Assembly: GCF_032191835.1 (NCBI RefSeq)
Contig: NC_083226.1
Location: 136,896,001 to 136,960,000 of the forward strand
Origin: Heteronotia binoei
Taxonomy: Eukaryota
DNA: 64,000 nucleotides
Reading direction: 5' to 3'
The position numbers and the translations under genes were made by a program. Shown here one piece after another: positions 1,672 to 33,680 of the stretch. The notes under the pieces are model-generated. The model had not been told where the DNA came from. It saw nothing but the letters and a program-made list of their open reading frames with translations, and made no database searches. How positions within the stretch are numbered: the first letter of the stretch is position 1; each line of letters begins with the position of its first letter.

Positions 1672-1747
1672 ATGTACTTGTTTCTGCAGATGTTGTTTCT
1701 TTTGTTCAGTATATCCTGCACCTTATTCAGCACAGCAAGAGCAAAAA
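1672..1747 (+). CDS. F2R-like: PAR1-like receptor A, coding exon 1 (signal peptide)
   Basis: ATG 1672 encodes hydrophobic MYLFLQMLFLLFSISCTLFSTARAK, followed by the donor A|GTAAGT at 1748 (phase 1). Homologous to exon 1 of copy B (shared TTATTCAGCACAGCA and upstream TTCCAGTCCAGGCAAC). Confidence 0.85.
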
Positions 1748-2016
1748 GTAAGTACCACACAATAGAATGTGTCTATCATTTCAAATCTGCAGCTTTTGTA
1801 CATGGGGTGGGGGGGAGAGTTATGGTTCTCACACATTTTGCTTTAGTTCTTAGTGAAATTTCACTCATTATATTTCTAATGGCTGTACTACATTATATTT
1901 CTAATGGCTGTACAGAATGACAATGAAACTAAAAGAGAAAGGGGAGGCTAGCAGTAAGAATATTCCTGTTCTAGGAACATTTGCATGTCAGTGTATTAAG
2001 TCTGTGTACATAATGT

Positions 2017-2239
2017 CTCGTTATCTCTCTCATCTCTCGGCTTGGCTTCGCGAACGAAGATTTAAGAAGGATGCAATAGTCCACGTTTGCTGCAGGCTCG
2101 CTGGTGGCTGACAAGACCAATGTGGGACAGGCAGGTCCGGCCACAGCGGCTGCAGGGAAAAGTCTGATTTAGGGTTGGTCCTGTAGCAGTGCGATTCTTC
2201 CTCAATCTCCTTTTGTCCTCAAGACCAGCTATGCGTGCT
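2017..2239 (-). mobile_element. BovB-like RTE LINE, short 3' fragment
   Basis: Nearly identical to 32554-32760, the 3' end of the larger RTE. Flanked by GTACATAATGT / GTACTTAATGT (likely TSD). Confidence 0.85.
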
Positions 2240-2359
2240 TAATGTACTTAATGTAGAAAAGCCCCCTTTTTGTGCACAACTGTCCACACAGCACCCATAA
2301 CATCATTGTTTGTGCTCTGCTTCACAACATATTAATGAAAATTTGAGAGGAAAGGTGGC

Positions 2360-2530
2360 ATGGTATATCCTGATTTCATCAGATCTTGGATGCTAAACGG
2401 GGTCAATACTTGGATGGGAGACCACCAAGGAAGTCTCTGCAGAAGAAGGCAATGGCAAACCACCTCTTCTCACTTACCTTGAAATCCCCTTACTGGGGTC
2501 TCTATAAGTTAGTTGTGACTTGACAGTACA
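2360..2530 (+). mobile_element. 5S rRNA-headed Sauria-type SINE
   Basis: 5S-like head (CCTGATTTCATCAGATCTTGG...TACTTGGATGGGAGACCACCAAGGA) joined to a Sauria body (GAAGGCAATGGCAAACCACCTC...GACTTGACAGTAC). Confidence 0.65.
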
Positions 2531-2835
2531 TATTTAGGTAATGAGATTTTGCCACAGGACTGGGAAGAACTGGTCTGCCTGTTTCTCTCTTCCTGGCCAA
2601 GTCCTGGCCATTTGGCAATCCTGGGAAAATATCCTCCTCTTCCTTCTCCTGCGCTACATAAACTGGGATATGGATGCATTGTGATTATGCAAATTCAGCA
2701 TTTATTTTTAAATGACTGCAGTTTCAGGACGAAGAAATTTGTAAAGGGAAAATAGTAAAGATGTCTTCTACCATTGAAAGAGAACTAAAATGAAATATGC
2801 AGTTTAGTGATCTTGGCAAAGCTTTATTTCATTAT

Positions 2836-3420
2836 ATTATTTTTTTATTTTATAAACACAAAAAATAAATAACTTATTCCATAATAATACGAAACGAAAC
2901 TAGTCATATGAAAAACATGGACAATCACCTTATATAGACATAAACATAATATTAGACTATCACTTCTTCTACAACTACTTCATCTGACCTAAATATACAT
3001 AAACTACATGCTACAATAATCTAACTAATTGCAGTTGTCAATCAGAGCTTGCTTGCTTGCTTACATAAAACTTGTATATATATGCTATTAATTTTATACT
3101 TTTATTTACTTTTATATCTTTTCCTCATCACTTCATATCTAAGAATTCATTTTATAAGCATGTTACCTGACTTTCTTATCTTTCTCCACCTTAGTGATTT
3201 AATCCTGATTATCAGCTATATATTTGAAAAATGTGTTCCGTTTTTCTTGGAATCTAAAGTTGATCTGTTATGTGTATAAGATATAAGATGTTAGTTTTGC
3301 CATTGTCACATATTTGTTTAATTTGTTCTTCCATGTCATCCGTTCTGGACATTTCTCTGTCTTCCATTTTATCGCTAATGTTATCCTTCTGCTGTTATCA
3401 TATATTTAAATAGTTAAATA
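2836..3420 (-). mobile_element. L1 3' fragment (ORF2 end plus A-rich tail)
   Basis: Minus strand reads ...LAIKWKTEKCPERMTWKNKLNKYVTMAKLT, an L1 ORF2 terminal signature. T-rich tail at ~2840. Confidence 0.6.
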
Positions 3421-4019
3421 GTTAACTAACTCATGGATGCATTGTGATTATGCAAATTCAGCATTTATTTTTAAATGACTGCAGTTTCAGGGCAGGATAT
3501 AAATTCAATTAAAAATAAAAATAAAATATTCTCATGATATTACTTGGTAAGGCATTTAATAACGTACTTTGAGGGTTCATTGGAAACTTAAATTTTAATA
3601 ACTTTTGCATTTCATCATGGATTTCTATCCAATATAGTCTTGTTTTTTTACATATTCACCATATATAATAGAATGTTGTGTGTGTGTTCTATTATTATTA
3701 TTATTATTATCTGTTTCTTTATATTCTGCCCGTTCCTCATAGGGGCTCAGAGCGGAGTACAACATGAGGCCTTGCAAGTGCATTTCAGGAAATGAGTTTA
3801 AGTGTGTTGGAAAAGGCAATGTTTGGTGTGCAAAGAAGAGAAGAAGACCCTGCAGGGGGCAGCAAGAAGACAATTAGATAGGATTGTGAGGTCAGAGCTG
3901 TTATGTGGCATTCCTTGTCTGTCCCCAGATTACTACTCTCAGGGCAATTTCCCCCTTCTTCTTGGAAGTGCCACACTCAATCTTACCCCCTCTCTCTCTC
4001 AGCTAGAGATGTAGATTAA

Positions 4020-4640
4020 AGCTGGTAGCCATGTTGGTCTGAAGTAGAACATTTGAGTCCAGTGGCACCTGTAATACCATAAAAGTTTTATTCAAACTTT
4101 TGTGTGCGCACACACAACCATTACAAATAGAAAAGTGGGGGTAGTTGCCAGGAACAGCTAGTTAGAATCAAGATGCATAAGTAACTGGGCAAGTATAGCT
4201 GAGACTGAATTAAAGCAGTTGTTAAGATCTGTGAATGACAGTAAATTAGCATATACATATAAGAGTTAACAAACAGATGTGAGAATTAAATGTTGAGTCC
4301 AGTGATACCTTCAAGATCAACAAAATTCAGTTCGAGGCATAAGCAAGACATGAGAGATGTATGAACATGGTATAAGCAGTGTAGTTGCATGTGTATTGAA
4401 ACAGATGGGGGGCATTAATTGCCAGGAAAAGCTAATTAGAGTCAAGATGCATAAGTAACTGAGCAATAAATACAGCAATAAATACAGCTAAGATTGGAAT
4501 GACACATTTGGTATGATATATAAATAGCAGCAAATTGGCATACAGATAATAAAGATGTTAACAACAGGCATGAGAACTAAATTTGAGTTCAGTGACACCT
4601 TTAAGGCCAACAAGTTTAATTTCTGGGTATAAGTGAGAAC
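4020..4640. mobile_element. Penelope-like element remnants (tandem terminal fragments)
   Basis: Three copies of TTGAGTCCAGTG(G/A)CACCT..AAGA/CCAACAA. Same motif family at ~8910-9000, 12590-12640, 23830-23910, 30000-30090, 49780-49910, 54470-54650, 60180-60225. Family assignment is from memory. Confidence 0.45.
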
Positions 4641-4790
4641 TGAGTGACTTAGCATGTGTACTGATAAAAGAAGACAATATCTCTGTTAAGCCTTTAGAGT
4701 TCCATTGTCCTGAGCGCTGTAATAACTTCTAATTCAATAACCTGTTCCAGTCTGTTTCTGAAATTTCTTTGCAAAAAAACAGCTACTTTG

Positions 4791-5274
4791 AAAAGGGCAA
4801 CTAGAATGATTAAAGGGTGGAACACTTTCTCTATGAAGATAGGTTAAAACGCTTGGGGCTCTTTAGCTTGGAGAAACGTTGACTGCGGGGTGACATGATA
4901 GAGGTTTACAACATTATGCATGGGATGGAGAAAGTAGAGAAAGAAATACTTTTCTCCCTTTCTCACAATACAAGAACTCATGGGCATTCGATGAAATTGC
5001 TGAGCAGTCGGGTTAAAACGGATAAAAGGAAGTACTTCTTCACCCAGAGGGTGATTAACATGTGGAATTCACTGCCACAGGAGGTGGTGGCGGCTACAAG
5101 CATAGCCAGCTTCAAGAGGGGGTTGGATAAAAATCTGGAGCAGAGGTCCATCAGTGGCTATTAGCCACAGTGTGTGTGTGTGTGTATAATTTTTTTTGGC
5201 CACTGTGTGACACAGAGTGTTGGACTGGATGGGCCATTGGCCTGATCCAACATGGCTTCTCTTATGTTCTTATG
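4791..5274 (+). mobile_element. CR1 LINE 3' fragment in intron 1 of PAR1-like A
   Basis: Encodes MIEVYNIMHGMEKVEKE...WNSLPQEVV...ISGY*. Ends in the (TTCTTATG)n tail. Same family as 33604-38495 and 55671-57937. Confidence 0.95.
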
Positions 5275-6384
5275 AGGTCCCCTGTTGAGTTCCTTTGGAG
5301 GTTGAAATGCTTTACGGGTAGAGAGAACAAGAAATGTACTTAGGAACCTATCTCTGTCTCTCCTCTTTTCTATCAGGTATGTTAATTCCTAAATAAACCT
5401 TTATCTACTCTTTAATCAGGATGTGCACCTTTGCTGTGTTAATTACTCTGCCAACAAAGTGTAGGTGTCTCACAGAGCAATCTTAAGGAGAGCTAAATTC
5501 TTTGTAGCTCACTGATGTCAGTAGAAGTGTGTCACTTTTTGAGATTGTGCTGGCAGTAGACTTTTTGCTAATGTGTAGAATTCAAATTGAAGGTATAGTA
5601 GACATAAAGTGAACGGAACATGATAAGCTGCAGGTGCCAAGTAAAACCACTGATCCATCTACCTCACTGATATCTATTCCAACTAGCAGCAGGCATTTCA
5701 AGTAGAACAATGTCTTCACCAAGAGATGCTAAATGAGGGCCAAACTCATATTATGTTTTTTGATGAGACAGGACCAAATTGTCTTGACCTGACTTGCTTT
5801 CCATGAAGCCACACAATAGCTGCTTTTTTGTATTTTTTATGTGCACACATGTTTGCGTGTGTGTGTGTGTGTACCTGAAAGTCATGGTGACCTCTGGTGA
5901 CTGATCCCTACTGGGGCATGGAGAATACTCAGAGAGTTGGCTGAAGAAAGTCTGCCCTGTTCTCCTATCAAAAAACAAACTAGCAAACACCATATATGAA
6001 AAATGTAAACTTTAGAATTTTACTTTGTATATTGAGAAGCTGTACTTATAATAAACAATATATTACAAAACTATGTGTCTATCGGTTCTGTTAACCATCT
6101 ATAACAAATGCTATTGAGCTCAATAAATACATAATACGCAATAATTTACACTATATCAATGGAGTGGAAAATGGTAACTCTCTAATGTGTAGCCAGGCAG
6201 TATAGTCCACAATATAAACCCAGTGGATTATTTATCCTATATATATAGTCCTGTTTCAAGCCAGAGTTCTTTATCAAGGGTTTTTATAAATGTATAAGTC
6301 CTTTGTCTCCTGTTATGCTGGCCCAAAAAGGCTGCATTGCTATTGGCTCACATTGAGCTGCTCCATTGGCTGATCTCCTGGAGC

Positions 6385-6497
6385 TCCTTCTCTGTGGCAC
6401 TCCAAGGAGGGCTCCCATCCAAGTACTTGCCAGAGCTGGCCCAGCTTAGTTTCTGACTGACAAGATTGGGCTTGCCTGGGCTATCCAGGTCAGGGCC
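6385..6497 (-). mobile_element. 5S-derived SINE head fragment
   Basis: Reverse complement of the 5S-like head (CCCATCCAAGTACT...CCAGCTTAGTTTCTG...CCAGGTCAGGGC). Confidence 0.55.
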
Positions 6498-6959
6498 ACA
6501 GCAGCTACTATGAACGTTATTTTAAAGGTCTGCGGGGCCCCAATTTGGCTCTGAATGATGTAGGGGTAGGAGGGGCGTCTGCCTTCTCTGTGTGCCAGAC
6601 CTTGGAAGCAGTTTTTTGCCTCATATTGGAAATGTACATGCAGAATCACTCACTGAGGAAGCCAGGCATTGAACATGGGAACTTCTATATGCAAGATAAC
6701 ATGTTCGTCCACTAAAATACAATCTGGGCATAAAACGTTTCTCAAAGAACTAGATTTGTACTGTTTATTTATTATTTACAACCCCCTCAATTTTGTCAAT
6801 GTAAGAGGCATGGAATATAGAACAAGGCATTTTGGATGTTCTTCTCCCTAATAATAGAGGAACCCAAACTGAGAAGGTATAACAATTTTATCAACATGGA
6901 TTAATTTTTAAAAGCTTAAGTATTCCTATAATTGATTCACACAATACTTTCTCTTTCAG

Positions 6960-8128
6960 ATTCATCTTTACATGTTATGATTTTTTCCCATGCAATTACT
7001 GTTTTTAAAGTGAAGTCTGGAAATCAATCAAACAATTTTACTCAAACCACCACTTACATTAACATCTCAGAAGATGCTGAAAGATACCTGACTAGTGTAT
7101 GGCTGACCCGCTTTGCTCCTGCAGTGCACACTCTTGTTGTTGCATTGAGCCTCCCTCTGAACCTCATGGCAATCTTTATGTTTGTGATCAAAATGAAGCT
7201 TAAGAAACCAGCCGTTGTGTACATGTTCAACCTGGCTTCCGCTGATGTGCTCTTTGCGAGCGTGTTGCCTTTTAAAATTTCCTACCATTTTTCTGGACAC
7301 CACTGGACCTTTGGACCGGAAATGTGCCGCTTTGTCACTGCCACTTTTTTCTGTAACATGTACTGCTCCATATTGTTGATGACAGCGATAAGCATTGACC
7401 GCTTCCTGGCAGTGGTGTACCCAATGCAGGCTCTGTCATGGCGCACGGTCAGGGGTGCCTTTGTGGTGTGCTGTGTCATCTGGCTTGTTGCCATAGCTGG
7501 GGTTATACCTCTGGTTATCACAGAACAAACAAAGAGAATCCCTCAGTTAAACATCACTACCTGCCTTGATGTGCTCGATGTATCTATTGTTATGAAAATG
7601 TTTCATTATTATTTTCCTGCATTATCTTTTTTCTTCTTTTTTATACCAGTAATAATTTCTACCACCTGCTATGTGTGCATTATAAAAAAACTTAATTCAT
7701 CTAAAATTACTGCTACAAAGCCTGGTAAGAAGAGGCGGGCCAAACTCTTGTCTGCAGCTGTCTTGTGTTCTTTTATTTTTTGTTTTGGGCCAACGAATGT
7801 CTTAGTGGTGGTGCAAAGCTTCTTCTTTCCACCTGATCAACCACTGAAGAGTGTCTCTTATGCCATTATGCTGGCGATCTGTATGGGCACCATCAATTGT
7901 TGCATTGACCCCTTGATTTATTATTATGCTTGTTCTGAGTGTCGAAAGAAGGTCAAGAAGCTCCTGTGCCTTAAAGAGCATTCTGAGCTTGGAAAAGGAA
8001 GTCAGACAACCAGTAGTAGAATGGGAACTTTTTCTAATGATTTGAATCATTCAGTGAAGGTATGTACTTATGATGAGTCTGGCAACGTGGTGGGTGGAAA
8101 GTGCCATCCAGTTGCAGCCAATTTATAA
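6960..8128 (+). CDS. F2R-like: PAR1-like receptor A, coding exon 2 (7TM GPCR); spliced product 414 aa
   Basis: Acceptor CTCTTTCAG|AT at 6959/6960, phase 1, matches exon 1. PAR1-type motifs ISEDAERYLTSVWL, SLPLN, NLASADVLF, CNMYCSILLM, SIDRFLAVVYP, FGPTNVL, CCIDPLIYYYA. Stop TAA 8126-8128. Probably a paralog, not the thrombin-receptor ortholog. Confidence 0.93.
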
Positions 8129-8296
8129 TGGCCCATAGGGTTTTCAAGGCAAGAGATAAACAAAGGTGGTTTGCTATTGCTTGCCTCTGTGTACCACACT
8201 TGGATTTCCTTGGTGGCCTCCTATCCAAGTAGTAACCAGGGCCAACGCTACTTCGCTTCTGAGCTCAGGCTAGCCTGGACCATCCAGGTCAGGGCT
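8087..8296 (-). mobile_element. 5S-Sauria-type SINE overlapping the stop codon of PAR1-like A
   Basis: GTGGAAAGTGCCATCCAGTTGCAGCC...GGGTTTTCAAGGCAAGAGA...GGTGGTTTGCTATTGC is the antisense Sauria tail. CCTATCCAAGTAGTAACCAGGGCC...CCAGGTCAGGGC is the 5S-like head. Confidence 0.7.
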
Positions 8297-8413
8297 CTGA
8301 CATAATATACTAATTGTAAATCATAACTTTTGCATGTTAGAGATGTGAATGTAGTGGATGTCTTCAATTGATATTGTTGTGAAATTGTCTGGTTACTTAG
8401 AATGGGACTGTTA

Positions 8414-8788
8414 GGCTGATAACAGATGGCTGGAAATAGAGCCGGCTGGAAATAGAGCACCCTGGAGCTTCTGGATGGCGCTCGAAAAACGGGCAGGCCG
8501 TGGGCACCTGGAGAGCATCTGGAACACTCAAGCATCCTGTTCATGGCTCCCTGGGTGCTCTTCAGGTGCTCCCCAGCCTTCCAGATGGCCAGGAGCCATC
8601 TTGGAGATGCCCCAGCGAAAAGGCACCACTTTTGCCATGGTGCCTTTTTTGAGGTGGGTGGAGCGGCCTTGAGGACGGGGTGAATACATGATCAGGACAG
8701 CCACCAGATGTTGTCGTCTGGAAGGTTTTTTTGGGTCAACTTCAGAGGCGTCTCTGAGTCGACCCAAAGTGCCAGTCTGTAATCAGCC
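8414..8788. mobile_element. PIF/Harbinger-type MITE, 375 bp
   Basis: Imperfect ~19-bp TIRs GGCTGATAACAGATGGC / GCCAGTCTGTAATCAGCC with a TTA target duplication on both sides (8411-8413, 8789-8791). Confidence 0.8.
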
Positions 8789-11700
8789 TTACTGTGCCTA
8801 AAGCGACTGAGGAGGTACAACAAAAGAATGTGTTTCTCAGTGGCTGTAGATGTTTCTTCAATGTGTACTAATTGTTAGGAGAAAAGCTCCTGATGTTATT
8901 CATAGATTCAGAGGAGTTAGCCATGTTAGTCTGTTGCTGCAAAATAGTAGAGTCCTGTAGCACCTTGAAGATTAACAAATTTTATTATAGCATAAGATTT
9001 AAAGAAACAGGAAATTCCCCATTTGTCTGGTTAGCTCCATGAGGGTGGCTAGAAGATGTGAAATCTGTGGGAGGGGGGAAGCTACAGTCACTTCTCCCTG
9101 TGTTCTGTGGTGGCAAACAAAAGAGCTAGTGGCATCTTGGGGACTAAAGTCCCATCATGCATGTGATGCAAAGTCCTTGTGTGATGTGCAAAAAAATGCA
9201 AGGATTGGGGAGAGTTGAAATCTCCACTCTGCCATAAAACTTGCTGGGTAACCTTGGACCGCTTCATTTCTGTTAGCCTAAGCCAAGTTGCAAGTTTGTT
9301 GTGAGCATAAAATGGATGAGAGGAAGACAACATATGCTGCCCTGAACTCTTGAGTCCTTGGAGGAACTGTAGGATAGTTATGCAATAGGTGATGAAGATA
9401 CATAATTTTTAATTACTGATGGGTAGGCATGTTGGTTTGTAGCAGCAAATAAAGCACAAGTCCTCTAGATTCCAGTTTTATAGTTTGAGTATGGAGAAGA
9501 GAGAAACAGGACAGAGAATATGCTATGAACTGGCTGAAGTGTTTTAGACTGCTTCTCACTCATTCATCACTTACACATGAAGTTGCCTTATACTGAATCA
9601 GACTGTTGGTCCTTCAAGGTCAGTATTGTGTAGACTGACAGTGGTTATCCAGTGGTTCAAGCAGAGGCCTTTCACATCACCTGCTGCCTGGTCCTTTTAA
9701 TTGGAGATGCCAGGGATTCAATTTGTATAAATAAAGGAAATGTCACAACTCTCCAGACCTCTTCCCTGCTCTTTAACTGAAAGGAAACCAAATTCAGCTA
9801 GCCTCTGGAACTTCTCACTGCTGCTGGAAGTGGGAATCATCTAACAATATTCATATATTTCTGTCTCTAAGATATCATAAGATTATTTAGATAGTTATCA
9901 CACACAGTCCTGTGGTTTTGAGACACGTTATCCATTATTTTGTACCAATATGTAACATAAATAGGAAAAATATGCAATCCCCCTCATCTTTATCCCAAAA
10001 GCTTCAGTTATTTTCATTACATTCATTATTATTACCATTAACTTTCATTTGTTTTAATTTCCACTAGTTTCAATAGATATATATTTCTGTTTATAATGGA
10101 TCAGTTTTCCACTCTATTTGGATGTTCTCAGGGACTGTGTACTCCTTTCACAATAGACACCTGTCAAATTTTAGAAAGGTGGGAGAAAAGATTCCAGTAT
10201 TACAATAAATTAATTTTTTCACTTGACTGGCAAACATTTAGCATTCCCCAAAGACTGTCAGTCTTAAAGAATTAGTAGCGTTTGACCATCCAAGATGGTC
10301 AATATGACAGCACAGTCTACAATGATGGCTTGGCTCCACCAACAAGTCAGGCAACATAACAGGAATTAGAGAGATAAGCCTGTTACCCTAAGAAGGCAGA
10401 CACTAGTTTGCCTTTAACATCTACAAGAAGGCATGGTTTGCATCAGCACAATGGATTGGCTGCAGACTGGCATGTGGAATTCCAAGAAAGCCAATGCCAA
10501 GAAAGCCAAGAACAGGCAGGCAAAAACTGGCAACCTGGACCCAAGGGAAGTAACGTAGTATATTCAGGAGAATGTACAGAACATGGAATACATAGGAAAG
10601 CAAGTGGCAGTGGGGATACAGAAACTGAAAGCTTGCATCCTCAGCAAGACAAGGCAGCAGGGCATAATAAGCAGAGGTTGGCCTTTCCCCAAGTATTGAA
10701 GGGTGAACCATTAATGAAAGCTGCAAACATTTCTGTACAGTTCTCCCCTGTTACAAGATGTACTTCACTTCAATTATTAGGAAGGTACGATGGTAGTTTC
10801 ATACCTCCTTTGATGCTCACTCTGCTCTCTATCCAGATGCCATTGAAACTAATGAAATGTTCTGTTGTTTCATTTTGTTTTGTTGCAATAATTAATATAG
10901 GGATGTCCTCAGTTCACTTAAATTCGTTTCCAAATTAATTCGCATCCCTAGAGCTGTCATTCATGGCAGTTCTACACTACTGTGGCCATGCAAAATTGCC
11001 CCATTTTAAAGCATTCCACTTTAAGGCCTTGTCCATATCATGGAGTGCAACTCTCACAGGTCCCCCTCCCTGTTTATATATAGAAAGTTCTTTACAGGGC
11101 AGCAGGAGCCAAATTTTAGGCTTTTGCTCAAAATCAGATGTGCAACAGAAGATGAGGTTTTATAAGCCAATGTTATTTATTTGTCTGTTTTGTTTGTTTG
11201 TTTATGGAATTTCTGTCCTCATCAAGGCCACCAAGGCAAAATAGGATTGTACTCTATTGCACTCTTAATTGTATGTATCACTTTGCTCTTATTGCATTGT
11301 CTTCTCCCTTTGCCATTTTCTGCATCATTTTATAGTACATCGTGCCTTAAGACAGCTTTTATTTGTACTGTTTTCTAATTCTGTAATCCTAGACCTGGTC
11401 ATATTGCACAATTTATTAGATGTGCTGTTTGACTTAAATTTTAAAATATTGTATAAGTCATCTTGACACTCAGTAAGAAAAGCAAGGTCTGGTTGGATGG
11501 GCAGTGCCTGGTGATATTTCAAAAACTGGTGAACTGTGCTGGAAGGATTTCCAATAGCAGACAGAATGTGAGTTAAGGTGTACCTGAGTTTCCATTAACA
11601 CTTCCCTACTAAGTGCTTTGGCCAATAGCAACCCCTTAAAACCTGATTATAATTCCATAACTGTTTTCTATGGATGTATGATAAAATACACTGCCAATGT

Positions 11701-12990
11701 AAGATCAAAATGAAATAAACAGTACTGCTGGTGACAATAAGATATCTCTGTTTTATTGATAAATGTCTATGGAATGTAGAACCTTACCTGAAATTGTGCA
11801 AGGATTTCTAGCAGGCTGAAAAAAGGATTCCAGTGTGAACAGATGGCTCTGGAAAAACTTGGCAAGCTGATCACAAACTTGGCAAGCTGATTGACTATCT
11901 TTTCCACTTGCCAATGGCTGCTTTCAGCCTGAAAATGTCCAAGACCTAAATAGTGTCCAAAACCTGGTGTGGCTTTATTTCATGTAGGGTCTACACATGC
12001 AGCAGTTTGAGGCAGCAGAATCCTCATGTCATGGACTTGAGTGTGCTAGAAATGAAAACCAAACCTGAATTCTCTTGAGCTTCCCCCTGCATTTTCTAGG
12101 CCTTCCCCTATTGTCCAGAACAAGGCCATTTTAGATCCTCTAAGCCTTCTTGGTCTTTCTAAGAAGCTAATGCCTGTAGTCTTTCTCTGAAACAGTGTTA
12201 TTTTAAACACCAGCTGAGAGACAGCAGGGTAGACAGGCTTATCACCCTGAAGGTCAGTTGTTTGGAAGGAGAACAAGGAACTCAGAGACATGCACAATGA
12301 GAACATACAGTTTCCGAAGGTCTCATAAGGACCCAAGGAGGGTCCAACCATCTTATCATACCAAAGACTTTTGCAACATGTACGGAACATATAATTTTTC
12401 ATGATTACTCTGATGCATAGTAGTCTCATAAGGCAGTTTTTCATAACAGAATATAAAATGACTGCCCCACAAGCAGCAAGGGATCGTCCTTCTGCACAGG
12501 AGAGTCCACCCTGCTCTGTCAGTCTGTTCTTTTCTACCCACTGCAGGTGAGCTCTACTGGAGAAATGTACTCTGTCTGAAGAAGTGTTCATGCATACAAA
12601 AGCTTTGTTGATCTTAAAGGTGTGTCTGGACTCAAACATAGGACTGTCTGTACCTATGTTTGTCTTTTCTTCCTGGCACAATCTAGAAGTCTGTGCAGGA
12701 TTGCTTCTAAATTGCTTGCTGTCTGTTGTTGGATACATTCCGCTTTGGATGAGAGCCTGTTTCTTTGAGCCTTTGTGCCTTTAGGAGTGAGAGCAGCAAG
12801 AGTGCTTACAAGATAAGATTCTGCAGCTCTTGAGGAAGGCCCTGATCCTCCCTTTCACAACAAGGTTGCATCGATGTGACCAAGTTGTTGAGAGAATATT
12901 TCCCCAGGGGCTTAGAGATCTTGATGAAGAACTGCCCTCTGCCGTCCACCGCTGTGAAGTAGGACAGGACCAGATTCCGTAGCTGCAATC

Positions 12991-13123
12991 TCACACACTA
13001 AATAGTGCACTTTCAACCCACTTTCAGTGCACTTTCCAACTGGATTCTGCTAATTCATGCAGTAAAATCCAGTTGGAAAGTGCATTAAAAGTGGGTTGAA
13101 AGTGCACTATTTAGTGTGTGTGA
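12991..13123. mobile_element. Palindromic MITE-like element (second copy 55191-55328)
   Basis: ~56-bp near-perfect inverted arms TCACACACTAAATAGTGCACTTTCAA...GGATT / AATCC...TTGAAAGTGCACTATTTAGTGTGTGTGA. Confidence 0.8.
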
Positions 13124-16213: not shown

Positions 16214-16649
16214 GGCCTGCCAAACTAAGGCCTTGCCCTTTAAGAGTCTCAGATCGTTACCTCCCAGGTGAACAATTAAAACCTGAGGAGGAGGACCCAT
16301 ACAGTCTTTAAACACCAAAGGCAGCAGGCCCGGCCACTGAAGGCCCCAGCGCCCCCGCCATTCAATACACACATGCTGGCTGAGTCCCAGCTGAGAGCCA
16401 ACCGCAGTTCTCTGAGCCTGATGAGCGGCCCAAAACATGTGGCCATGGCCGCATACGAGAACTCGGCTCCTCTGGCCAGGAGCAACAGCATCTAAAGAGA
16501 GAAAACAGTTAAACAAGAACAGAACCAACAATAAACAGACACCAAGTCACTCAAGGCCTAATAAAAGGTCGCACGTAAGCCTTATAGGCCGAGGAACACC
16601 ACCTTGTAAGGAAAGCCCCCTACTTTTCATACATATGAACATCGTGATC

Positions 16650-17807: not shown

Positions 17808-17812
17808 CCTAA

Positions 17813-18700
17813 CTAATTCCCCAACCTCGTTTGGAGGGCATTTAGGCTAACAACCTGCCCAATCTCTGAATGGAAGTGGAAGGATACCCCATTACCTGCT
17901 GTTGAGGCTGCCCCAATTCTAAAGGAGTGGGTCCCAAACTGCACCCCAGACAACCCCAACTCACCCAAAGCCCGTGACATTACTGCCCAAAACTGATGCA
18001 ACCATTCAAACCATTCGAATGTATAAACAAAAACCCCTCCATGGGCCCCCTAACTGCCAAAGAAGAAGCCAACGCAGTAACTGGACACAGCTCAAGATCT
18101 GAACAACAACCCAACTCGAGCACCGTACCCTTCTGCAACTGATCCGTCTTAGAGCGATGGACAGTGATGACTGCCTTACCCGCAAATAGCTGCAGATCCC
18201 TTAACAACAGAGCCTTACCAGAAACATCGTTTCTAGACCAGCTCACTTACTCTAAAAGCCCCAAAAAAGGCTAACAAAGGCGCAGCGTGAAACAAACATG
18301 CTTCAAATGACGAAGCACACACCACGTCCCAAACCCTCTTCAAACCCCGCAGAATCAAAGGAGACACAGGATTCGGTGTATCAACCCTGGGACTGGCCTC
18401 TTTGGCCCACCCCTCCAGCATCTTTCGAATACGAAAGTCAGCTGTTTCTTCCCTATAACCCAGCGCCTTACTGACAAAAGCCAATGCAGACAGGCGCCCC
18501 CTAATGGCTTGCACAGCCAACCCCTTACCTCGCAGCAAAACACGGTAATGGAGCAAATGCTCTACCGGGAGGGGCCAAACCCCGCAATACCCTACCTCAG
18601 CCCTAAAGTCTTCAAACTGCTGCACAGCCCGTTCGTAAGACTTCCTGGTGCTGGGCAAAATAGCTAGACCTATTGCTCTGCAGGCCTCGGCTCTCCAATC
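17813..18700 (-). pseudogene. Ngaro tyrosine recombinase, frameshifted into three ORF pieces
   Basis: MADWRAEACRAIGLAILPSTRKSY...AFRVSELV; VITVHRSKTDQLQKG...CPV; GTHSFRIGAASTA. Confidence 0.85.
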
Positions 18701-19376
18701 AGCCATAGCTCCTGGGGCATTGGCACCGGCTCTTTGTCGGCATCTGGGGCCAGCTGACAAAACCTCTCCATCTGTTTACGAGATAGAGCATCAGCCACCC
18801 CATTACTCACCCCAGGAACATGCTTGGCTAAAAACAAAATGTTAAGCCGCAAACAGCACAGAGTGAAGGCCCTCACCAATCTCATAACCCGGCCAGATTT
18901 GGATGAAAGGGAATTAATGACGTGGACCACCGTCATATTATCACACCAAAAATGGACAGTGTGATTGGCCATATCCTTCCCCCACAGCCAAACCGCGTCT
19001 AAAATAGGAAAGAACTCGAGAAACGTAAGATCCCGGTTCACACCAACCTTTACCCAGGAGTCAGGCCAACTATCCGCGCACCAATGTCCACGGAAATAGA
19101 CTCCAAAACCCAAGAAACCAGCAGCATCATACATGACCTGAAGCTCAGCTTCGAGCCTCATGTTGTCCCTCCAAAAAGAGACTCCATTAAAGGACTCCAA
19201 AAATTCCTGCCAAACCCTCAAATCATCCCTCTTGCTGCAGGTGACCCTAGTTCTATGCTGAGGCAAGTGTAACCCTGCCATAGCATCGCACAGCCTTCTA
19301 AGAAAAGCCCTCCCAGGAACAGCCACTTTGCAAGCAAAGTTGAGGTGCCCAACTAGCTGCTGCAACTCCAACAAAG
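18670..19376 (-). pseudogene. Ngaro RT thumb plus RNase H remnant (RT catalytic core deleted)
   Basis: DIRS-type RNase H motifs are present. No YxDD. Joined directly to gag sequence at ~19376. Confidence 0.8.
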
Positions 19377-20005
19377 TCCAAATACTGGAACAGGGATGCT
19401 GCCCGCCACGGCTGCGCCCTCGCAATCACCCCGGCATAAATAAAGAACCCAGGAAGCCAATTAGCCCAGGTCCTGTCCACCTTCTGTTTTTTTCAATTTT
19501 TCCTTCTCTTTCTCATCCAATTCTTCCTTGTCTTTTGTCTCAACCTCCCAAAAGAGAAGAGAAAAAATATCCACGTACTCCCCTTTTAATATTTTTTCCC
19601 TAGTAGCGGGAAGCAAGTGGTCTCCCAGCGGCAAGGCAACCTCCCCAAATGGCAAAACAGCAAAAGGCACCATCCCATATGTTGAGGGTGCCCCCATAAA
19701 GGAACCAGCCATGCCAGGATGCCCTGCGCCCGGGTACACACTAGAAACGCCTTGCCCACATGGCCAAGCCCAATTCTGAAATGCACCCAACGCAGAGGAG
19801 GCAGACACCCCCGCATTTGACATGGAAGCGCCCTGCCCGGCCGCCAAAGCAGGCCCCCATGCTCCCCATGGCCAAACCTGCCCAGGCCCCGCCTGCAAAT
19901 TATCACTCGACCTACCTCCGAATCCAGCAGGAACCAATGGCAAACCGACCCCTGATGCTCCAGCCGCCGCCATCAAACCCGCATCCGGACTGCAAAGGCC
20001 AGCAT

Positions 20006-20538
20006 TAGGGTTGCCAAGTCCAATTCAAGAAATATCTGGGAACTTTGGGGGTGGAGCCAGGAGACTTTGGGGGTGGAGCCGGGAGAAATTAGGGGTGGGG
20101 CCAAGATCAAGGCTGTGACAAGCATAATTGAACTCCAAAGGGAGTTCTGGCCCTCACATTTAAAGGGACGGCACACCTTTTCAATTCCTTCCTTCCATAG
20201 AAAATAATGAAGGATAGGGGCACCTTCTTTTTGGGCTCATAGAATTGGACCCCTGGTCCAATCTTTTTGAAACTTGGGGAATATTTTGGGGAGAGGCACT
20301 AGACGTTATACTGAAAATTTGGTACCTCTATCCCAAAAAACAGCCCCCCCCCCCCGAGCCCCAGATACCCGCAGATCAATTCTCCATGATTTTCTATGGG
20401 AATAAATCTCCATAGGGAATAACAGAGTTCCCAGCAGACATTTCCCTCCCCTCCCCCCGCTTTCTGATGACCCTGAAGCGGGGGGAGGGTCTCCAAACCG
20501 GGGGATCCCCTGCCCCCACCTGGGGATTGGCAACCCTA
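20006..20538. mobile_element. hAT MITE (Blackjack-like TIR), 533 bp, inserted in Ngaro gag
   Basis: TIRs TAGGGTTGCCAA / TTGGCAACCCTA. Perfect 8-bp TSD GCCAGCAT (19998-20005, 20539-20546). Confidence 0.93.
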
Positions 20539-22199
20539 GCCAGCATCCCTGCCAGGCACGACTCCACTAGACCTGCCCTCAAGAATAGACAACCTGATGA
20601 GAATACTCGCCTGCTTACCCTTCTTAGATTGCCTCACACCATCCTCCCCACCTGGAGAAAGGATGCCCGCTGCCTGTTCCAATGCTCTCAATCTACAAGC
20701 AATATTGGAATCAACCACCATATCACCCTCCTCATCAGAAGAGGATAACAGTGGTGGTGGCCTTTTCGCAGGAGCCTTGGGCGCCTTAGGCGCTGGCTTT
20801 TTTCCTTTGGGCTTGCCCGACCCTTTTTCACCAGCCATCTAAATAGCAAGCACAAGACCACAAAATGGCCTCCTGCAGCTCCACTTTAAAATGGCTTCCC
20901 CCTGGAAGAAGAAAGGGAACTCAAAATGGCCACAAAAGCCGCTGCTGCACACCAATGTCTCCAGTAGGAGAAAAATGGGGGGGAGGGGGAGGCTCTCCAA
21001 AATAGTCACCTGCCAATCTCAAGGGCAATAATAAAAAACCCAGGTTGCCCCACAGGCCCACACCCTCAAAAATTAAAAGGGGAAAGACCAACCCCTGGGC
21101 TCCACAACCCCTGCCCCAGCAGACCCCAAACCCTAGGCAGACTCAGCCAACAAGGACACCGCCTCCACCGCCTCCGATGCCACCGCCAGCCCGCAGCACT
21201 GCAGCCGACGCTCCAGCCGACACCGATGCTCCAGCCAACACTTCAGCTGCCGCTGCCCAGTCAACTGCCCTAATAAACCCCGACGTCCAACCAAAAACAA
21301 AAGAAAAGCCTCAGCCTCAGCCGATCGTCTGCCAAGACGAAGGAGCCGATGAGGAGCATCCTGCCTTTTCCTCTGCGTGCCGAAACGGGTGCCCCCTGAC
21401 TCTTCCCATCCAGGGAAGCAAACCCTGCTCATGCAGCCTAGCAGCTACACTGCAGTCTGCAAGCATAAGATTCTCTAAATTAAAAAGGTCCAAATATACA
21501 GATTTCTGTTGTATGAAAATAATTCATTTTGGTTGACTTTTTACTATGTTTTTTTACCAGTGTATATAGCATAATTTTATATATTTTTGCATTTTCCCAA
21601 CTACTAAGCAATTAAAATTTTTAGGAGCAATAGTACTAGTAGAGTTTATTTTCTTTTGAATGAGCATGCACAGGAGTCTTACAGCATCTTGTAAAATTTG
21701 TATTATTTAAAAGTATACAGGGGAAGCTCAGGTGCAGGGGATGAAGTCTTCCTACAGGGCAATGGGTCTCCAACATCAACTCCACAGAGAGAACCAAGGT
21801 GAGGCTTTGTACATCAAAGTGTTATGCAACACTGTCTTTGGGGTGGGGGACAACATGTGCACAGGCATGTATAGTTTCCCTGCTGCTGCTGCTGCTGCTT
21901 CACAGCAGCAATGGGACTTCCACATGGTAGGTTTCCTTGTAGTTTCCCTGTCTCCTAGCGGTGGCCACTCACATGCACACTGCTACCGGAGATTTCTCAC
22001 TCAGTTTCTCTCTCCAAAGCTGCCAAGCTAGGGTTTCTTCAAATTTATAAGGAATAACAATTTTTGTAATCAGCAATTAGGAATCTCATTCAAGAAGTTA
22101 TTGATATCAGGGGACCGTGATTGATTGATTCAATTTATAAACCTTCTCTTAACAATTAGGAAAAATCCAGTCAACAGCCCTGATTCCCATCAAATGACA

Positions 22200-22520
22200 A
22201 AAGGAAAAAGGAAAGGAAAGGTCCCCTGTTCAAGCACCAGTCGTTTTTTACTCTGGGGTGACGTTGCTTTCACAACGTTTTCACGGCAGACTTTTTACGG
22301 GGTGGTTTGCCATTGCCTTCCCCAGTTATCTACACTTTCCCTCCAGCAAGCTGGGTACTCATTTTACCAACCTCGGAAGGATGGAAGGCTGAGTCAACCT
22401 TGGGCCAGCTACCTCAATCCAGCTTCCGCCGGAGTCAAACTCAGGTCGTGAGCAGAGAGTTCAGACCACAGTACTGCAGTACTGCTGCTTTAGCACTCTG
22501 TGCCACGAGGCTGCTCAAAT
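22200..22520 (-). mobile_element. Sauria SINE
   Basis: Antisense Sauria body: AAAGGTCCCCTG...GGGGTGGTTTGCCATTGCCTTCCCC...GCTGGGTACTCATTTTACCAACCTCGGAAGGATGGAAGGCTGAGTCAACC. Confidence 0.85.
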
Positions 22521-23303
22521 GACAAAAACATGGCAATTAATCAATTATTGTCCAAATCACAATACTCAGTTGGAAATTCACAATACAAAGGATTTACTTT
22601 TCTGGTCCTTTTATTTCAGATCATGTCTGAAAACCAGCAGAAAATAGGCATTAGAAGCCTCAACTGGCTCAGCTTTTATTCAGAGCAGATAGATTTCCTA
22701 GTCTGATATTATAAATACATTCTCTCCATGATGGTCGTTAGAAACTTGCAGTATGCCAGATGGAAATCATTTCTCTGTTAACACAGTCGACTTCAGTAAA
22801 CATTGTAATTTAAACCAGAAACACCAGCTACTCTGATAAACAGAGATAAAAACCATCAACAGCACAGGAATCCAAGGTCAGTTTATGTAGCAAGGATGCA
22901 TCTGCACTGTTATCTCCCCCCTCCCCTAACCTCCAAAGCAACAAAGAAAAGACATTTTCCTTTGGTACCAGGACGCTGCTCACTTAAGGAGGGAAATAAA
23001 TTCGCAGAGTTGTCTAAGTGATATTTTTTTAAAATCAATCAGGAGGGAGACATTAAAAACCACAGTCATCCTTTTCCTCAGTTCTACCCTTTCCTTAGTT
23101 AGGTGGGGATGGTTCTTGGACTGTGTGGTTAATGTTGTGTCTCCTCTCCTGTTCTTTTAAGTTAATGGTCATGCTCAAATGGGACAAATAATGGACTTAG
23201 ATTTTTGCAGATCAGAAAAAAGGCATTTTAGCAGCCCAGCTGGGAACTGTTTTTTGCTTGCAGCCTTTTCTTCCAGTCCAGGCAACCAAATTCTAGAGTA
23301 GAA

Positions 23304-23370
23304 ATGGACCCTTCTCTGCAGGTGTGGTTGTCTGTCCTCTGCATCTTATTCAGCACAGCAGGAGCAAACA
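23304..23370 (+). CDS. F2R-like: PAR1-like receptor B, coding exon 1 (signal peptide)
   Basis: GAAATGG start. Encodes MDPSLQVWLSVLCILFSTAGAN, then the donor A|GTAAGT at 23371 (phase 1). Homologous to exon 1 of copy A. Confidence 0.87.
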
Positions 23371-24250
23371 GTAAGTACAACCTACCATGGTTTTTTTAAC
23401 ACCAGTCACTTTAGCTCAAGAGGGAGGGGAAGGGCTATATGTTCCCTGTTTGTTACTTTTTCTTTGTTGTGGAATTTCACACCACCTTTTCCTATGGATT
23501 GTGCCTTGAAAGACAGCCAAAACTAAGGGCGGAACAGAACACTTGAGTTCTTGAGAGATTTTCTTCCCAGTGTTTGTGGGATGTTTTTGAGTATGTGTAA
23601 TAATTTATTTGGCATTTGATCCTAAAAGATGCCATTCCAGCTAAAAATCACAAAAATACAAACCAATAACTCTGAATTTTGCACAAAATAAATGTAATCC
23701 ATACACTATCCATCGTTTGTCACTATTGATTGTACTCCCATTCTTAGGGAGGTTTTTCGCATAGAATCTAGTACATTACTAAAGAGGTACTTTCACACAC
23801 ACACACACTGAACATAACCTTTCATACATCTGATGAAGTGAATTCCAGCTCTTGTAAGCTTATGTCAGAATAAACTTGTTACTATTTATGAAGCTGCAAA
23901 ACTCTTTACTTATTAGAAGTAAAGTCACACAAGTTCTTTCTGGCCACTCTTCAATGCTTCATGATCCTTTTTAGGATATATCCCTCTCCCTATTTTCCCA
24001 CCCAAGCATATCAAACTGTGGAAGATGTGGATGCAGTTGTGCATATTCATCACTTATAAGAAAAACAGCTTAGGGGAAAAGAATGGTGTTTCTGCTTTTT
24101 CATTGTTTTTATGTTGTACCACGCAGCTTTTAATTGGAAACTACATCAAGCACTTTGGTGAAAGAGTTATATATACATTACTAGATAAAACAAATGAATG
24201 TATTAGTGTCTGGCATGCATGTGCAATTAATATATTGCTTCATCTTTCAG

Positions 24251-25350
24251 ACTCATCGTATCCTGATATAGTATTATTTACTTCAGTATTCACTTCTATC
24301 GATCATGAGTCTGGCATCAATCAGAGCAATCAGAGCGAAGAGCACATCATTATTTCAAATGACACTGAAAGATACCTGACTAGTGTATGGCTGGCCTGGT
24401 TTGTTCCTTCAATCCACACTCTTGTAGTTGCATTGAGTCTTCCTCTGAACATCATAGCAATCCTTATGTTTGTGATCAAATTAAAGATTAAGAAACCAGC
24501 CACTGTGTATATGCTCAACCTGGCCTCTGCTGATGTGCTGTTTGTGAGCACACTGCCTTTTAAGATTTTCTATGAGTTTTCTGGACGCAACTGGATCTTT
24601 GGACCAGAAATGTGCCGCTTTGTCACTGCAGCCTTCTACTGCAACATGTACTGCTCCATACTGCTGATGACGGCGATAAGCATTGACCGCTTCTTGGCAG
24701 TGGTGTATCCAATGCAGGCTCTGTCATGGCGCACAGTAAGGCGTGCCTCTGTGGCATGCTGTGTCATCTGGCTTATAGCCATAGCTGGAGTTACCCCTCT
24801 GCTTATCACAGAACAAACTAAGAAAATCCCTCAGCTAAATATTACTACTTGCCGAGATGTGATAGATTTGTCTGTTGTGTTGGAAATACTTCAGTATTAT
24901 TTTTCTGCATCAACTATTTTATTCTTTTTTGTACCATTAATAATTTCTGTCTCCTGTTACATTTGTATTATAAGAAAACTTAGTGCATCTAAAATAACTC
25001 CTGAAAAACCTGGTAAGAAGAGGCGGGCCAAACTCTTGTCTGCTGCTGTCTTGTGTTCTTTTATTTTATGTTTTGGGCCTACTAATGTCTTGGCCTTGGT
25101 GCAAAACTTATTCCTTTCAGCTGATCAAAGGTTTGAGGGTCTCACTTTTTCCTACATGCTAGCTCTCTCTATTGGTACCATCAACTGTTGCATTGACCCA
25201 TTGATCTATTATTATGCTTCTTCTGAGTGTCAAAGGCAGGTCAGGAATCTCTTTTGTCATAAAAAGCATTCTGAGTTTGATAAAAGTCAGACAACAAGCA
25301 CTAATATGGGGACCTTTTCCAATAGTTTGAATCATTTATCTCAAGCATAG
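24251..25350 (+). CDS. F2R-like: PAR1-like receptor B, coding exon 2 (7TM GPCR); spliced product 388 aa
   Basis: Acceptor CATCTTTCAG|AC at 24250/24251, phase 1. Same PAR1 motifs as copy A, uninterrupted. Stop TAG 25348-25350. Confidence 0.93.
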
Positions 25351-33603: not shown

Positions 33604-33680
33604 TAAGAACATAAGAACATAAGAAGAACATAAGAGAAGCCATGTTAGATCAGGCCAATGGCCCATCCAATCCAACATTC

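What the first reader, a model, noticed from the sequence alone, without database searches (positions are those of the whole stretch)
1672..25350. Tandem PAR1-derived GPCRs that have lost the thrombin activation switch
Seen: two intact two-exon PAR1-like genes next to F2RL1. After splicing, the N-termini read ...ARAK-NSSLHVM-IFSHAI (A) and ...AGAN-NSSYPDIV-LFTSVF (B). Established: mammalian PAR1 reads NATLDPR/SFLLRN followed by the acidic hirudin-like DKYEPFWEDEE exosite. Copy A aligns without gaps (NSS-LHVM-IF vs NAT-LDPR-SF); B is one residue longer. The glycan sequon and the ligand position-2 Phe are kept, but P1 Arg becomes Met (A) or Val (B), P1' Ser becomes Ile/Leu, and the acidic exosite is gone. 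B has no Arg or Lys anywhere in this N-terminal segment before the ERYLT motif. Inference: these are not thrombin receptors. They may sense elastase-, chymase- or MMP-like, microbial or venom proteases, respond to a non-tethered ligand, or act as PAR co-receptors. I do not know whether such paralogs have been functionally described; automated annotation would simply call them PAR1-like.
Basis: partly seen in the sequence, partly recalled or inferred. Interest (0 to 1): 0.88.

Follow-up and report, generated by a model that had tools for sequence, protein, structure and literature searches.

The report
Gecko PAR1 duplicates without thrombin site
Bynoe's gecko carries two intact, evolutionarily maintained copies of the thrombin receptor gene that have lost every sequence feature thrombin needs to switch the receptor on, as part of a lizard-wide and so far undescribed branch of this receptor family.

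Summary
The window is Heteronotia binoei chromosome CM063328.1. It holds two intact two-exon PAR1-like genes on the + strand: A (1672-1747 plus 6960-8128) and B (23304-23370 plus 24251-25350). Both lie upstream of F2RL1.

The canonical F2R sits about 21 kb upstream of A. It keeps a basic P1 (LGPK|TFVY) and the acidic exosite. A and B keep neither.

A and B belong to a PAR1-like clade found in tuatara and all sampled squamates. The clade nests inside amniote PAR1, as sister to canonical sauropsid PAR1. None of the 22 clade members tabulated has the hirudin-like exosite. The basic P1 was lost repeatedly.

- **Copy A:** the Met is recent. Gekko and another gekkonid have Lys, and Eublepharis has Arg.
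- **Copy B:** the aligned P1 is Asp, not Val, and it is conserved in all five geckos examined.

Both copies also replace the ligand-docking residues H336, Y337 and Y350, which are invariant in all canonical PAR1, PAR2 and PAR4 sequences tabulated (Y337 is Gln in the PAR3 representative). Each lineage keeps its own replacements.

7TM dN/dS is 0.22-0.35, against 0.11-0.14 for F2R, so these are constrained genes rather than pseudogenes. A has nevertheless been lost in two gecko lineages.

No RNA data were available and the activating stimulus is unknown. The family carries only automated annotation. This is a new variant of a known kind, of moderate interest.

The parts
1672..1747 (+). Gene A exon 1: start codon, hydrophobic signal-peptide-like segment, ends ...STARAK plus the first base of an Asn codon (phase 1)
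   Evidence: The exon with its ORF and GT donor is about 90% identical in Gekko (L003) and Paroedura (L005), and is also present in Sphaerodactylus and Eublepharis.
1748..6959 (+). Gene A intron (5.2 kb), GT...AG, contains an interspersed repeat
6960..8128 (+). Gene A exon 2: rest of the receptor (exodomain, 7TM, tail) with stop codon
   Evidence: Pfam 7tm_1, E = 4.8e-55. 100% identical to NCBI P0001 over 298 aa.
6977..7003 (+). A: Met codon at the aligned P1 (6977-6979), followed by the tethered-ligand-like IFSHAITV
   Evidence: ATG here corresponds to AAG (Lys) in Gekko japonicus and in a related gecko's contigs (6978 T>A). Eublepharis has Arg.
23304..23370 (+). Gene B exon 1: start codon and signal-peptide-like segment, ends ...STAGAN plus one base (phase 1)
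23371..24250 (+). Gene B intron (880 bp), GT...AG
24251..25350 (+). Gene B exon 2 with stop codon
   Evidence: (spliced product equals NCBI P0004).
24265..24294 (+). B: Asp codon at the aligned P1 (24265-24267), followed by IVLFTSVFT
   Evidence: The Asp-Ile junction is conserved in five gecko species.
61366..62466 (+). F2RL1 (PAR2) exon 2 ORF, retains ...KPKGR|TFIRQN. Context gene, not part of the finding.
   Evidence: Groups with the PAR2 clade at 100/100.

Best explanation
A and B are functional, selectively maintained members of a lepidosaur PAR1-like paralogue clade. The clade arose by tandem duplication of F2R after the mammal-sauropsid split. It sits between F2R and F2RL1. A and B then split within geckos. 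Their transmembrane signalling core is still PAR1-like, so they are probably signalling-competent GPCRs. They are not thrombin receptors: the exosite-binding acidic element is gone in every clade member tabulated, and the basic P1 residue is gone in both Heteronotia copies. The canonical F2R about 21 kb upstream keeps both features. Inferred mechanism: they still use an N-terminal intramolecular ligand, and both the trigger and the docking site have been re-coded together. In A, the ligand-like segment [I/F/V]-F-x-x-x-I-T-V keeps Phe at position 2. It was preceded by Arg or Lys until a recent Lys-to-Met change in the Heteronotia lineage. In B, a conserved Asp-Ile junction (P-D-I motif) replaces Arg-Ser in all geckos examined. 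This points to unmasking by a protease that is not trypsin-like, such as an Asp-directed enzyme or a metalloprotease. What is shown: gene structure, synteny, phylogeny, selection, and motif and pocket changes. What is inferred: signalling competence, any proteolytic activation, and the identity of the protease.
For: Structure and synteny. Phylogeny: PAR1-like clade 100/99, sauropsid canonical PAR1 99/93, both together 100/93, amniote PAR1 100/98. The A/B split is gecko-specific (99/95). Selection: 7TM dN/dS is 0.22-0.35 for A and B orthologue pairs against 0.11-0.14 for gecko F2R. All eight gecko exon-2 ORFs are intact. The Heteronotia terminal branches show nonsynonymous/synonymous change ratios near 1.1, roughly omega 0.4. 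Switch loss: canonical PAR1 exodomains have 6-10 acidic residues per 20-residue window, and about half of the sequences tabulated match the [FYW][ED]x[IFL][PS] pattern; PAR1-like have 3-6 and none of the 22 matches. Canonical Heteronotia F2R reads NDS-LGPK|TFVY plus an acidic run. Ligand and pocket: H336, Y337 and Y350 are invariant in all canonical PAR1, PAR2 and PAR4 sequences tabulated (the PAR3 representative has Gln at 337), but are Q/S/S in every A and Q/N/T in every B except Sphaerodactylus B, which keeps Tyr at 337. D256, Y161, C175-C254, F182, M186, I190, D199-R200-F201 and K135 are kept in both Heteronotia copies. Y350A lowers tethered-agonist potency 158-fold in human PAR1 (PMC11443083). 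Extracellular loops are 92% (A) and 79% (B) identical between Heteronotia and Gekko, so the new pocket is itself constrained. The B exodomain evolves at omega 0.4-0.9, similar to the F2R exodomain at 0.3-0.8. Pfam 7tm_1.
Against: No RNA run could be listed, so expression and A's exon 1 use are unverified. NCBI's A model omits exon 1. A is dispensable: its exon 2 is deleted or pseudogenised in Paroedura and absent in Sphaerodactylus. Gekko B's exon 1 donor reads AT instead of GT. A's exodomain evolves at omega 0.7-1.8 on only 38 codons. Loss of Y337 and Y350 could equally mean that tethered-ligand docking was abandoned. In AlphaFold2, a cleaved canonical gecko F2R shows an N-terminal strand (residues 2-4) plus an extra ECL2 strand, while B cut at Asp28|Ile29 shows a disordered N-terminus with pLDDT below 50 for residues 1-21. 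This is weak evidence against canonical docking in B. No protease is identified.
Confidence: 0.45

Rival explanations
1. A and B are no longer protease-activated. They act as co-receptors or dimer partners that modulate F2R or F2RL1 signalling, as PAR3 does for PAR4 and PAR1, or they respond to a soluble, non-tethered ligand.
For: The docking residues H336, Y337 and Y350 are replaced. There is no basic P1. AlphaFold2 does not dock B's N-terminus although it does so for the F2R control. ICL2 is 85-90% and TM3 90-100% identical to gecko F2R. The genes sit in one cluster with F2R and F2RL1.
Against: The position-specific Asp-Ile junction and the following S-x-[V/I]-F-T segment are conserved in B across five geckos, and Phe2 plus I-T-V is conserved in A. 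A pure co-receptor role does not obviously require this. The C-tails differ strongly from F2R (23-26% identity). Co-expression is unknown.
Confidence: 0.25
2. The two genes are under relaxed constraint and drifting towards loss. The missing switch is decay, not re-specification.
For: 7TM omega is about twice that of F2R. A was lost in Paroedura and Sphaerodactylus. Gekko B has a mutated exon 1 donor. A's exodomain omega is near or above 1. Heteronotia A's Lys-to-Met change is very recent.
Against: Eight of eight gecko exon-2 ORFs are intact. Omega of 0.22-0.35 is well below 1. Lineage-specific pocket residues and extracellular loops are conserved. The Heteronotia terminal branches still show roughly omega 0.4. 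The clade has persisted since before the tuatara-squamate split.
Confidence: 0.15
3. The N-termini are mis-modelled. Real transcripts use a different first exon or acceptor that supplies a normal Arg/Ser activation site.
For: No RNA evidence is available. NCBI's A model has no exon 1 and an unexpected 3' exon. In Paroedura, NCBI joins A's exon 1 to B's exon 2, so first-exon choice may be flexible.
Against: The exon 1 ORF, the GTAAGT donor, the polypyrimidine-AG acceptor and the phase-1 junction are conserved across geckos. Any first exon joined at this acceptor would still be followed by the same exon 2 sequence, which lacks a basic P1 at the aligned site.
Confidence: 0.05

Closest known systems
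PAR1 / F2R (thrombin receptor), including the canonical Heteronotia F2R about 21 kb upstream (P0025)
   Same: Same gene cluster and orientation, and the same two-exon phase-1 structure. About 60% identity. They nest inside amniote PAR1 in the tree. DRF, K135, Y161, D256, the C175-C254 disulfide and the F182/M186/I190 relay are kept. The N-glycan sequon lies just before the activation-site position.
   Different: No basic P1 (Met in A, Asp in B). No hirudin-like acidic exosite. The exodomain is about 30 residues shorter. H336, Y337 and Y350 are replaced. TM7 is only 58-62% identical, against 91% between gecko and primate PAR1. The C-tail is 23-26% identical.
PAR2 and PAR4 (F2RL1, F2RL3)
   Same: PARs that lack a hirudin-like exosite and are opened by proteases without exosite-I docking. 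The ancestral PAR1-like clade (Arg at P1, no exosite) resembles this design.
   Different: PAR2 and PAR4 keep Arg at P1 and keep H336/Y337/Y350 equivalents. A and B do not. A and B are phylogenetically PAR1, not PAR2 or PAR4.
PAR3 (F2RL2) as a co-receptor
   Same: A PAR family member whose main known role in some settings is as a cofactor rather than an autonomous signaller. This is a possible analogue for A and B.
   Different: PAR3 keeps a thrombin site (Lys/Arg at P1) and a hirudin-like motif. A and B have neither and are not PAR3 orthologues.
Other lepidosaur 'PAR1-like' genes (tuatara, skinks, lacertids, amphisbaenian, teiid, varanid, iguanian, snakes) and anuran 'PAR1-like' expansions
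   Same: The lepidosaur genes form one clade with A and B (100/99). None of those tabulated has the exosite. Several independently lack a basic P1 (Hemicordylus La Gln, Podarcis Lb Gly, Rhineura Tyr). Frogs show an independent PAR1 expansion with non-canonical N-termini.
   Different: Many lepidosaur members keep Arg at P1 (a skink-like Logan contig LHDPR|LY, Lacerta DAAR|SL, Podarcis TILR|FA, boid and pythonid snakes SKPR|KL, Eublepharis A SNR|VF) and keep Y350. Among the species examined, Heteronotia is the only one with two intact copies in which neither has a basic P1.

Membership tests
Class A (rhodopsin-like) GPCR | 7TM_1 domain with conserved TM3-ECL2 disulfide and D/E-R-Y/F motif | tested here: met
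   Pfam PF00001, E = 4.8e-55 for both. C175, C254 and D199-R200-F201 are present.
PAR1 (F2R) subfamily | Phylogenetic placement within the PAR1 clade rather than PAR2, PAR3 or PAR4 | tested here: met
   Inside amniote PAR1 (100/98), sister to canonical sauropsid PAR1. The best solved-structure match is human PAR1, E = 4e-121.
PAR1 (F2R) subfamily | Two-exon gene (signal-peptide exon plus receptor exon) in the IQGAP2-F2R-F2RL1 cluster | tested here: met
   The order F2R then PAR1-like is also seen in Paroedura and Sphaerodactylus.
Protease-activated receptors (canonical serine-protease switch) | Arg or Lys at P1 of the activation site, preceding the tethered ligand | tested here: not met
   A has Met and B has Asp at the aligned position. 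The canonical Heteronotia F2R has Lys.
Thrombin receptors (PAR1/PAR3 type) | Hirudin-like acidic exosite-I binding element C-terminal to the cleavage site | tested here: not met
   Maximum of 3-4 acidic residues per 20 in A and B against 6-10 in canonical PAR1. No [FYW][ED]x[IFL][PS] motif in any of 22 PAR1-like sequences.
Protease-activated receptors (tethered-agonist docking) | ECL2/TM6/TM7 docking residues D256, Y161, H336, Y337 and Y350 (Guo et al. 2024) | tested here: not met
   D256 and Y161 are kept. H336, Y337 and Y350 become Q/S/S (A) and Q/N/T (B). They are invariant in all canonical PAR1, PAR2 and PAR4 sequences tabulated; the PAR3 representative has Gln at 337. Functional weight of Y350 is from PMC11443083.
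Protease-activated receptors | Signalling triggered by proteolytic unmasking of the N-terminus | not testable with these tools
   Needs expression and protease assays. AlphaFold2 gave only a weak hint: docking-like strand in the F2R control, none in B.
Expressed gene | Transcripts with the proposed splice junctions | tested here: inconclusive
   No RNA run was listed. The DNA contigs laid came from related species. NCBI's B model agrees and its A model differs.

The most novel reading that the evidence does not exclude
The lepidosaur PAR1-like clade is a distinct, undescribed PAR lineage whose activation switch has been repeatedly re-coded. The gecko B receptor, with an Asp-Ile junction conserved across the three gecko families sampled and a co-changed docking pocket, would then be a natural PAR tuned to an Asp-directed protease (granzyme-B-like) or to another non-trypsin-like protease. 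That would be a new input channel for protease sensing by GPCRs.
Probability: 0.2. Interest if true: 0.75.

Novelty: new variant of a known kind. Interest (0 to 1): 0.5.

Why it matters
All four PARs characterised so far have a basic residue (Arg or Lys) at their canonical activation site, and PAR1 pharmacology is built on the thrombin-hirudin-site-tethered-ligand model. This clade is a set of natural experiments. PAR1 descendants kept a PAR1-like transmembrane signalling core for a very long time while discarding the exosite. In several lineages independently they also discarded the basic P1. In geckos they lost tethered-agonist docking residues that are otherwise invariant in canonical PAR1, PAR2 and PAR4. 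If they signal, they would show which parts of the PAR1 activation machinery are replaceable, and could reveal new protease-receptor pairs in reptile haemostasis, immunity or wound repair. The one published family-wide evolutionary analysis found here reports a single PAR1 in reptiles, so the clade appears to exist only as automated 'PAR1-like' annotation.

Tried and rejected
1. RNA-seq confirmation of the splice junctions. No RNA run could be listed for A, and only three low-share DNA or unknown runs for B.

2. Read laying on A exon 2. The contigs of X1 and X2 are about 91% identical, so they come from a related gecko, not H. binoei. They could not verify the Met codon in this species, but they show Lys at that position.

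3. First trees without canonical amphibian PAR1 placed the PAR1-like clade outside amniote PAR1, and an AU test rejected a lepidosaur-specific duplication (p = 0.013). After adding canonical amphibian, caecilian, salamander and platypus PAR1, the clade moved inside Amniota as sister to sauropsid PAR1. The AU test no longer rejects a lepidosaur-specific origin (p = 0.15). The 'pre-amniote fifth PAR' reading is therefore rejected as a sampling artefact.

4. Orthology of A or B to PAR3 (F2RL2) by position. Rejected: both are PAR1 by tree, and F2R lies upstream next to IQGAP2.

5. AlphaFold2 of cleaved B against a cleaved F2R control. Only pLDDT and secondary structure were available. The result is suggestive, not decisive.

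6. Literature searches for a description of these paralogues found none.

Full report
**Identity and anatomy**

The best protein hits identify the genome as Heteronotia binoei (Bynoe's gecko). P0001 is 100% identical to A's exon 2, and NCBI names all these genes 'proteinase-activated receptor 1-like'. Gene B maps to CM063328.1 at 136,919,304, which puts window position 1 at 136,896,001.

- **Gene A:** exon 1 at 1672-1747, GTAAGT donor, a 5.2 kb intron, acceptor at 6959, exon 2 at 6960-8128.
- **Gene B:** exon 1 at 23304-23370, an 880 bp intron, exon 2 at 24251-25350.

In both genes the phase-1 junction builds the Asn of an N-S-S sequon. The spliced B protein equals NCBI's P0004 residue for residue.

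NCBI's model of A differs. It starts at a Met inside TM1 and splices from a donor near 8058 to an extra exon at about 11988-12065. A's exon 1 use is therefore supported only by conservation. The exon, its ORF and its donor are about 90% identical in Gekko and Paroedura, and are present in Eublepharis and Sphaerodactylus.

**Where the real thrombin receptor is**

A third H. binoei protein, P0025 (431 aa), is encoded at 136,857,316-136,876,213, directly after IQGAP2. That is about 21 kb upstream of A. The gene order is IQGAP2 - F2R - A - B - F2RL1.

P0025's exon 2 begins GFLLK-NDS-LGPK|TFVYSSSDETVEKISWDYSDSDTENE. It has a sequon, Pro at P2, a basic P1, a T-F ligand start and an acidic run. F2RL1 in the window keeps KPKGR|TFIRQN. 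The loss of the switch is therefore specific to A and B within this cluster.

**Phylogeny**

An early tree and AU test suggested a pre-amniote origin. That result did not survive better sampling.

With canonical frog, salamander, caecilian and platypus PAR1 added, the careful tree gives these supports:

| Clade | Support |
|---|---|
| Amniote PAR1 | 100/98 |
| All sauropsid sequences | 100/93 |
| Canonical sauropsid PAR1 | 99/93 |
| PAR1-like clade (tuatara plus all sampled squamate groups) | 100/99 |

The AU test does not reject a lepidosaur-specific duplication (p = 0.15). The genes are therefore PAR1-derived. The duplication dates to the sauropsid or lepidosaur stem. The A/B split is gecko-specific (99/95). 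Frog 'PAR1-like' genes are a separate expansion nested within anuran PAR1.

**The switch across the clade**

Canonical PAR1 exodomains are 86-100 residues long. They have 6-10 acidic residues in their best 20-residue window, and about half of the sequences tabulated match a [FY]E-x-IP-type pattern. All 22 PAR1-like exodomains examined have 3-6 acidic residues and no such motif. Those with a complete N-terminus are about 63-68 residues long including the signal peptide. Loss of the exosite is therefore ancient and appears clade-wide.

The basic P1 is patchy:

- **Arg kept:** Eublepharis A, a skink-like Logan contig (LHDPR|LY), Lacerta, one Podarcis copy, one Hemicordylus copy, boid and pythonid snakes, and tuatara.
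- **Basic P1 lost:** Hemicordylus La (Gln), Podarcis Lb (Gly) and Rhineura (Tyr).

In the A lineage the sequences are:

- Eublepharis: NSS-SNR|VFYSVITV
- Gekko: NSS-LLFK|FFSHAITV
- Heteronotia: NSS-LHVM|IFSHAITV

The Met codon ATG differs from Gekko's AAG by one base. Contigs from another related gecko also read Lys. A's loss is therefore recent, and Phe at ligand position 2 is conserved.

In the B lineage all five geckos read x-[P/H]-D|I-x-[L/Y], followed by [S/A]-[V/I]-F-[T/S]. By spacing from the sequon and by Paroedura's LDPD|ILLQ, the aligned P1 is Asp.

**The docking pocket**

I used human numbering taken from an alignment to a primate PAR1 and the contacts reported for tethered-agonist-bound PAR1 (PMC11443083).

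- **Kept in both Heteronotia copies:** C175-C254, Y161, D256, V257, F182, M186, I190, D199-R200-F201 and K135. L258 is kept in A and is Ile in B.
- **Replaced:** H336, Y337 and Y350. All three are invariant in all canonical PAR1, PAR2 and PAR4 sequences tabulated; the PAR3 representative has Gln at 337.
  - Every A orthologue reads Q/S/S, plus E347K, and Y353 replaced by Ile or Leu.
  - Every B orthologue reads Q/N/T, except that Sphaerodactylus B keeps Tyr at 337.

Y350A alone costs 158-fold in potency in human PAR1.

Regional identity to gecko F2R:

| Region | Identity to gecko F2R |
|---|---|
| TM3 | 90-100% |
| ICL2 | 85-90% |
| TM7 | 58-62% (91% between gecko and primate PAR1) |
| ECL3 | 6-12% |
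| C-tail | 23-26% |

The extracellular loops are still 92% (A) and 79% (B) identical between Heteronotia and Gekko. The altered pocket is therefore itself under constraint. This agrees with another first-stage note on the same stretch.

**Selection and gene fate**

All eight gecko exon-2 ORFs are intact.

| Measure (NG86 dN/dS) | A and B | Gecko F2R |
|---|---|---|
| 7TM core | 0.22-0.35 | 0.11-0.14 |
| Exodomain | B 0.4-0.9; A 0.7-1.8 (38 codons) | 0.3-0.8 |

The Heteronotia terminal branches show nonsynonymous/synonymous change ratios near 1.1, roughly omega 0.4.

These are constrained genes, but less tightly constrained than F2R. There are also signs of dispensability:

- A's exon 2 is reduced to a stop-containing remnant in Paroedura and is absent in Sphaerodactylus, with no assembly gaps at either place.
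- Gekko B's exon 1 donor reads AT.

**Structure prediction**

AlphaFold2 was run on canonical gecko F2R starting at Thr41. It shows a short N-terminal strand (residues 2-4) and an extra ECL2 strand, reminiscent of the published ligand-ECL2 sheet. B starting at Ile29 has a disordered N-terminus (pLDDT below 50 for residues 1-21) and no extra strand. This is only a weak indication that B does not dock in the canonical way.

**Interpretation**

The descriptive claim is well supported, at about 0.9: these are tandem PAR1-derived receptors without the thrombin switch. What activates them is not known.

I favour retained intramolecular-ligand signalling with a re-coded trigger and pocket, at 0.45 for the whole statement. 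Three observations support this:

- the Asp-Ile junction and the ligand-like segment are conserved
- the new pocket residues are conserved within each lineage
- the transmembrane signalling core is intact

The rivals are a non-proteolytic or co-receptor role (0.25), relaxed drift towards loss (0.15) and mis-modelled 5' ends (0.05).

**Novelty**

Searches found no description of these paralogues. The family-wide study PMC4771116 states that reptiles have one PAR1 copy and that lineage-specific PAR expansion occurs only in teleosts. This is a new variant of a known receptor kind.

Noticed in passing
upstream of the window: CM063328.1 136,857,316-136,876,213 (L001:10001-28898): The canonical H. 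binoei F2R uses Lys, not Arg, at P1 (LGPK|TFVY). Paroedura also has Lys (FVPK|TFVY), while Sphaerodactylus has Arg. This is a PAR3-like Lys site in a PAR1 orthologue.
   Followed up: partly
window 8058 and about 11988-12065: NCBI's model of gene A splices from a GTATGT donor just before the end of the exon 2 ORF to a small downstream exon, replacing the last residues. The read-through tail (…NVVGGKCHPVA…) is conserved between Heteronotia and Gekko.
   Followed up: partly
L005:9990-24234 (Paroedura picta) and L007:3697-10897 (Sphaerodactylus townsendi): Gene A's exon 1 survives with an intact ORF and donor although A's exon 2 is a stop-containing remnant (L005:11507-11855) or absent. NCBI joins A's exon 1 to B's exon 2 in Paroedura (P0007). 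A's first exon may therefore serve as an alternative first exon for B.
   Followed up: partly
L006 about 7690 (Gekko japonicus): The exon 1 donor of Gekko B reads AT instead of GT, and NCBI's model (P0003) skips the signal peptide and the ligand region. This is either a real splice-site loss or a draft-assembly error.
   Followed up: no
proteins P0122, P0276-P0359: Neobatrachian frogs carry large independent expansions of 'PAR1-like' genes: at least 8 in Leptodactylus fuscus, 5 each in Hyperolius and Mixophyes. Many have non-canonical N-termini lacking the K/R|TF site and FEEIP motif of canonical frog PAR1. One (P0122) has a duplicated F-x-F-x-S-F-Y-F-N-P-E-S-R segment.
   Followed up: partly
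window 8116-8200: Directly after gene A's stop codon lies a very high-copy interspersed repeat, with summed contig depth in the tens of thousands in all three runs laid.
   Followed up: no
window 18233-19976 (- strand): The A-B intergenic region holds overlapping ORFs that look like a retroelement, in a GC-rich (about 0.50-0.52) block. The element type was not determined.
   Followed up: no
window 33650-37701 and 55774-57666 (- strand): Two copies of a LINE with a long reverse-transcriptase/endonuclease ORF lie between B and F2RL1. The first is interrupted by the 131-N run at 33681-33811, which was left untouched.
   Followed up: no
L004:9800-10882 and L004:19174-20280 (Eublepharis macularius): Eublepharis A and B are identical over a long TM2-TM3 stretch where other species' A and B differ. 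This suggests local gene conversion between the tandem copies.
   Followed up: no
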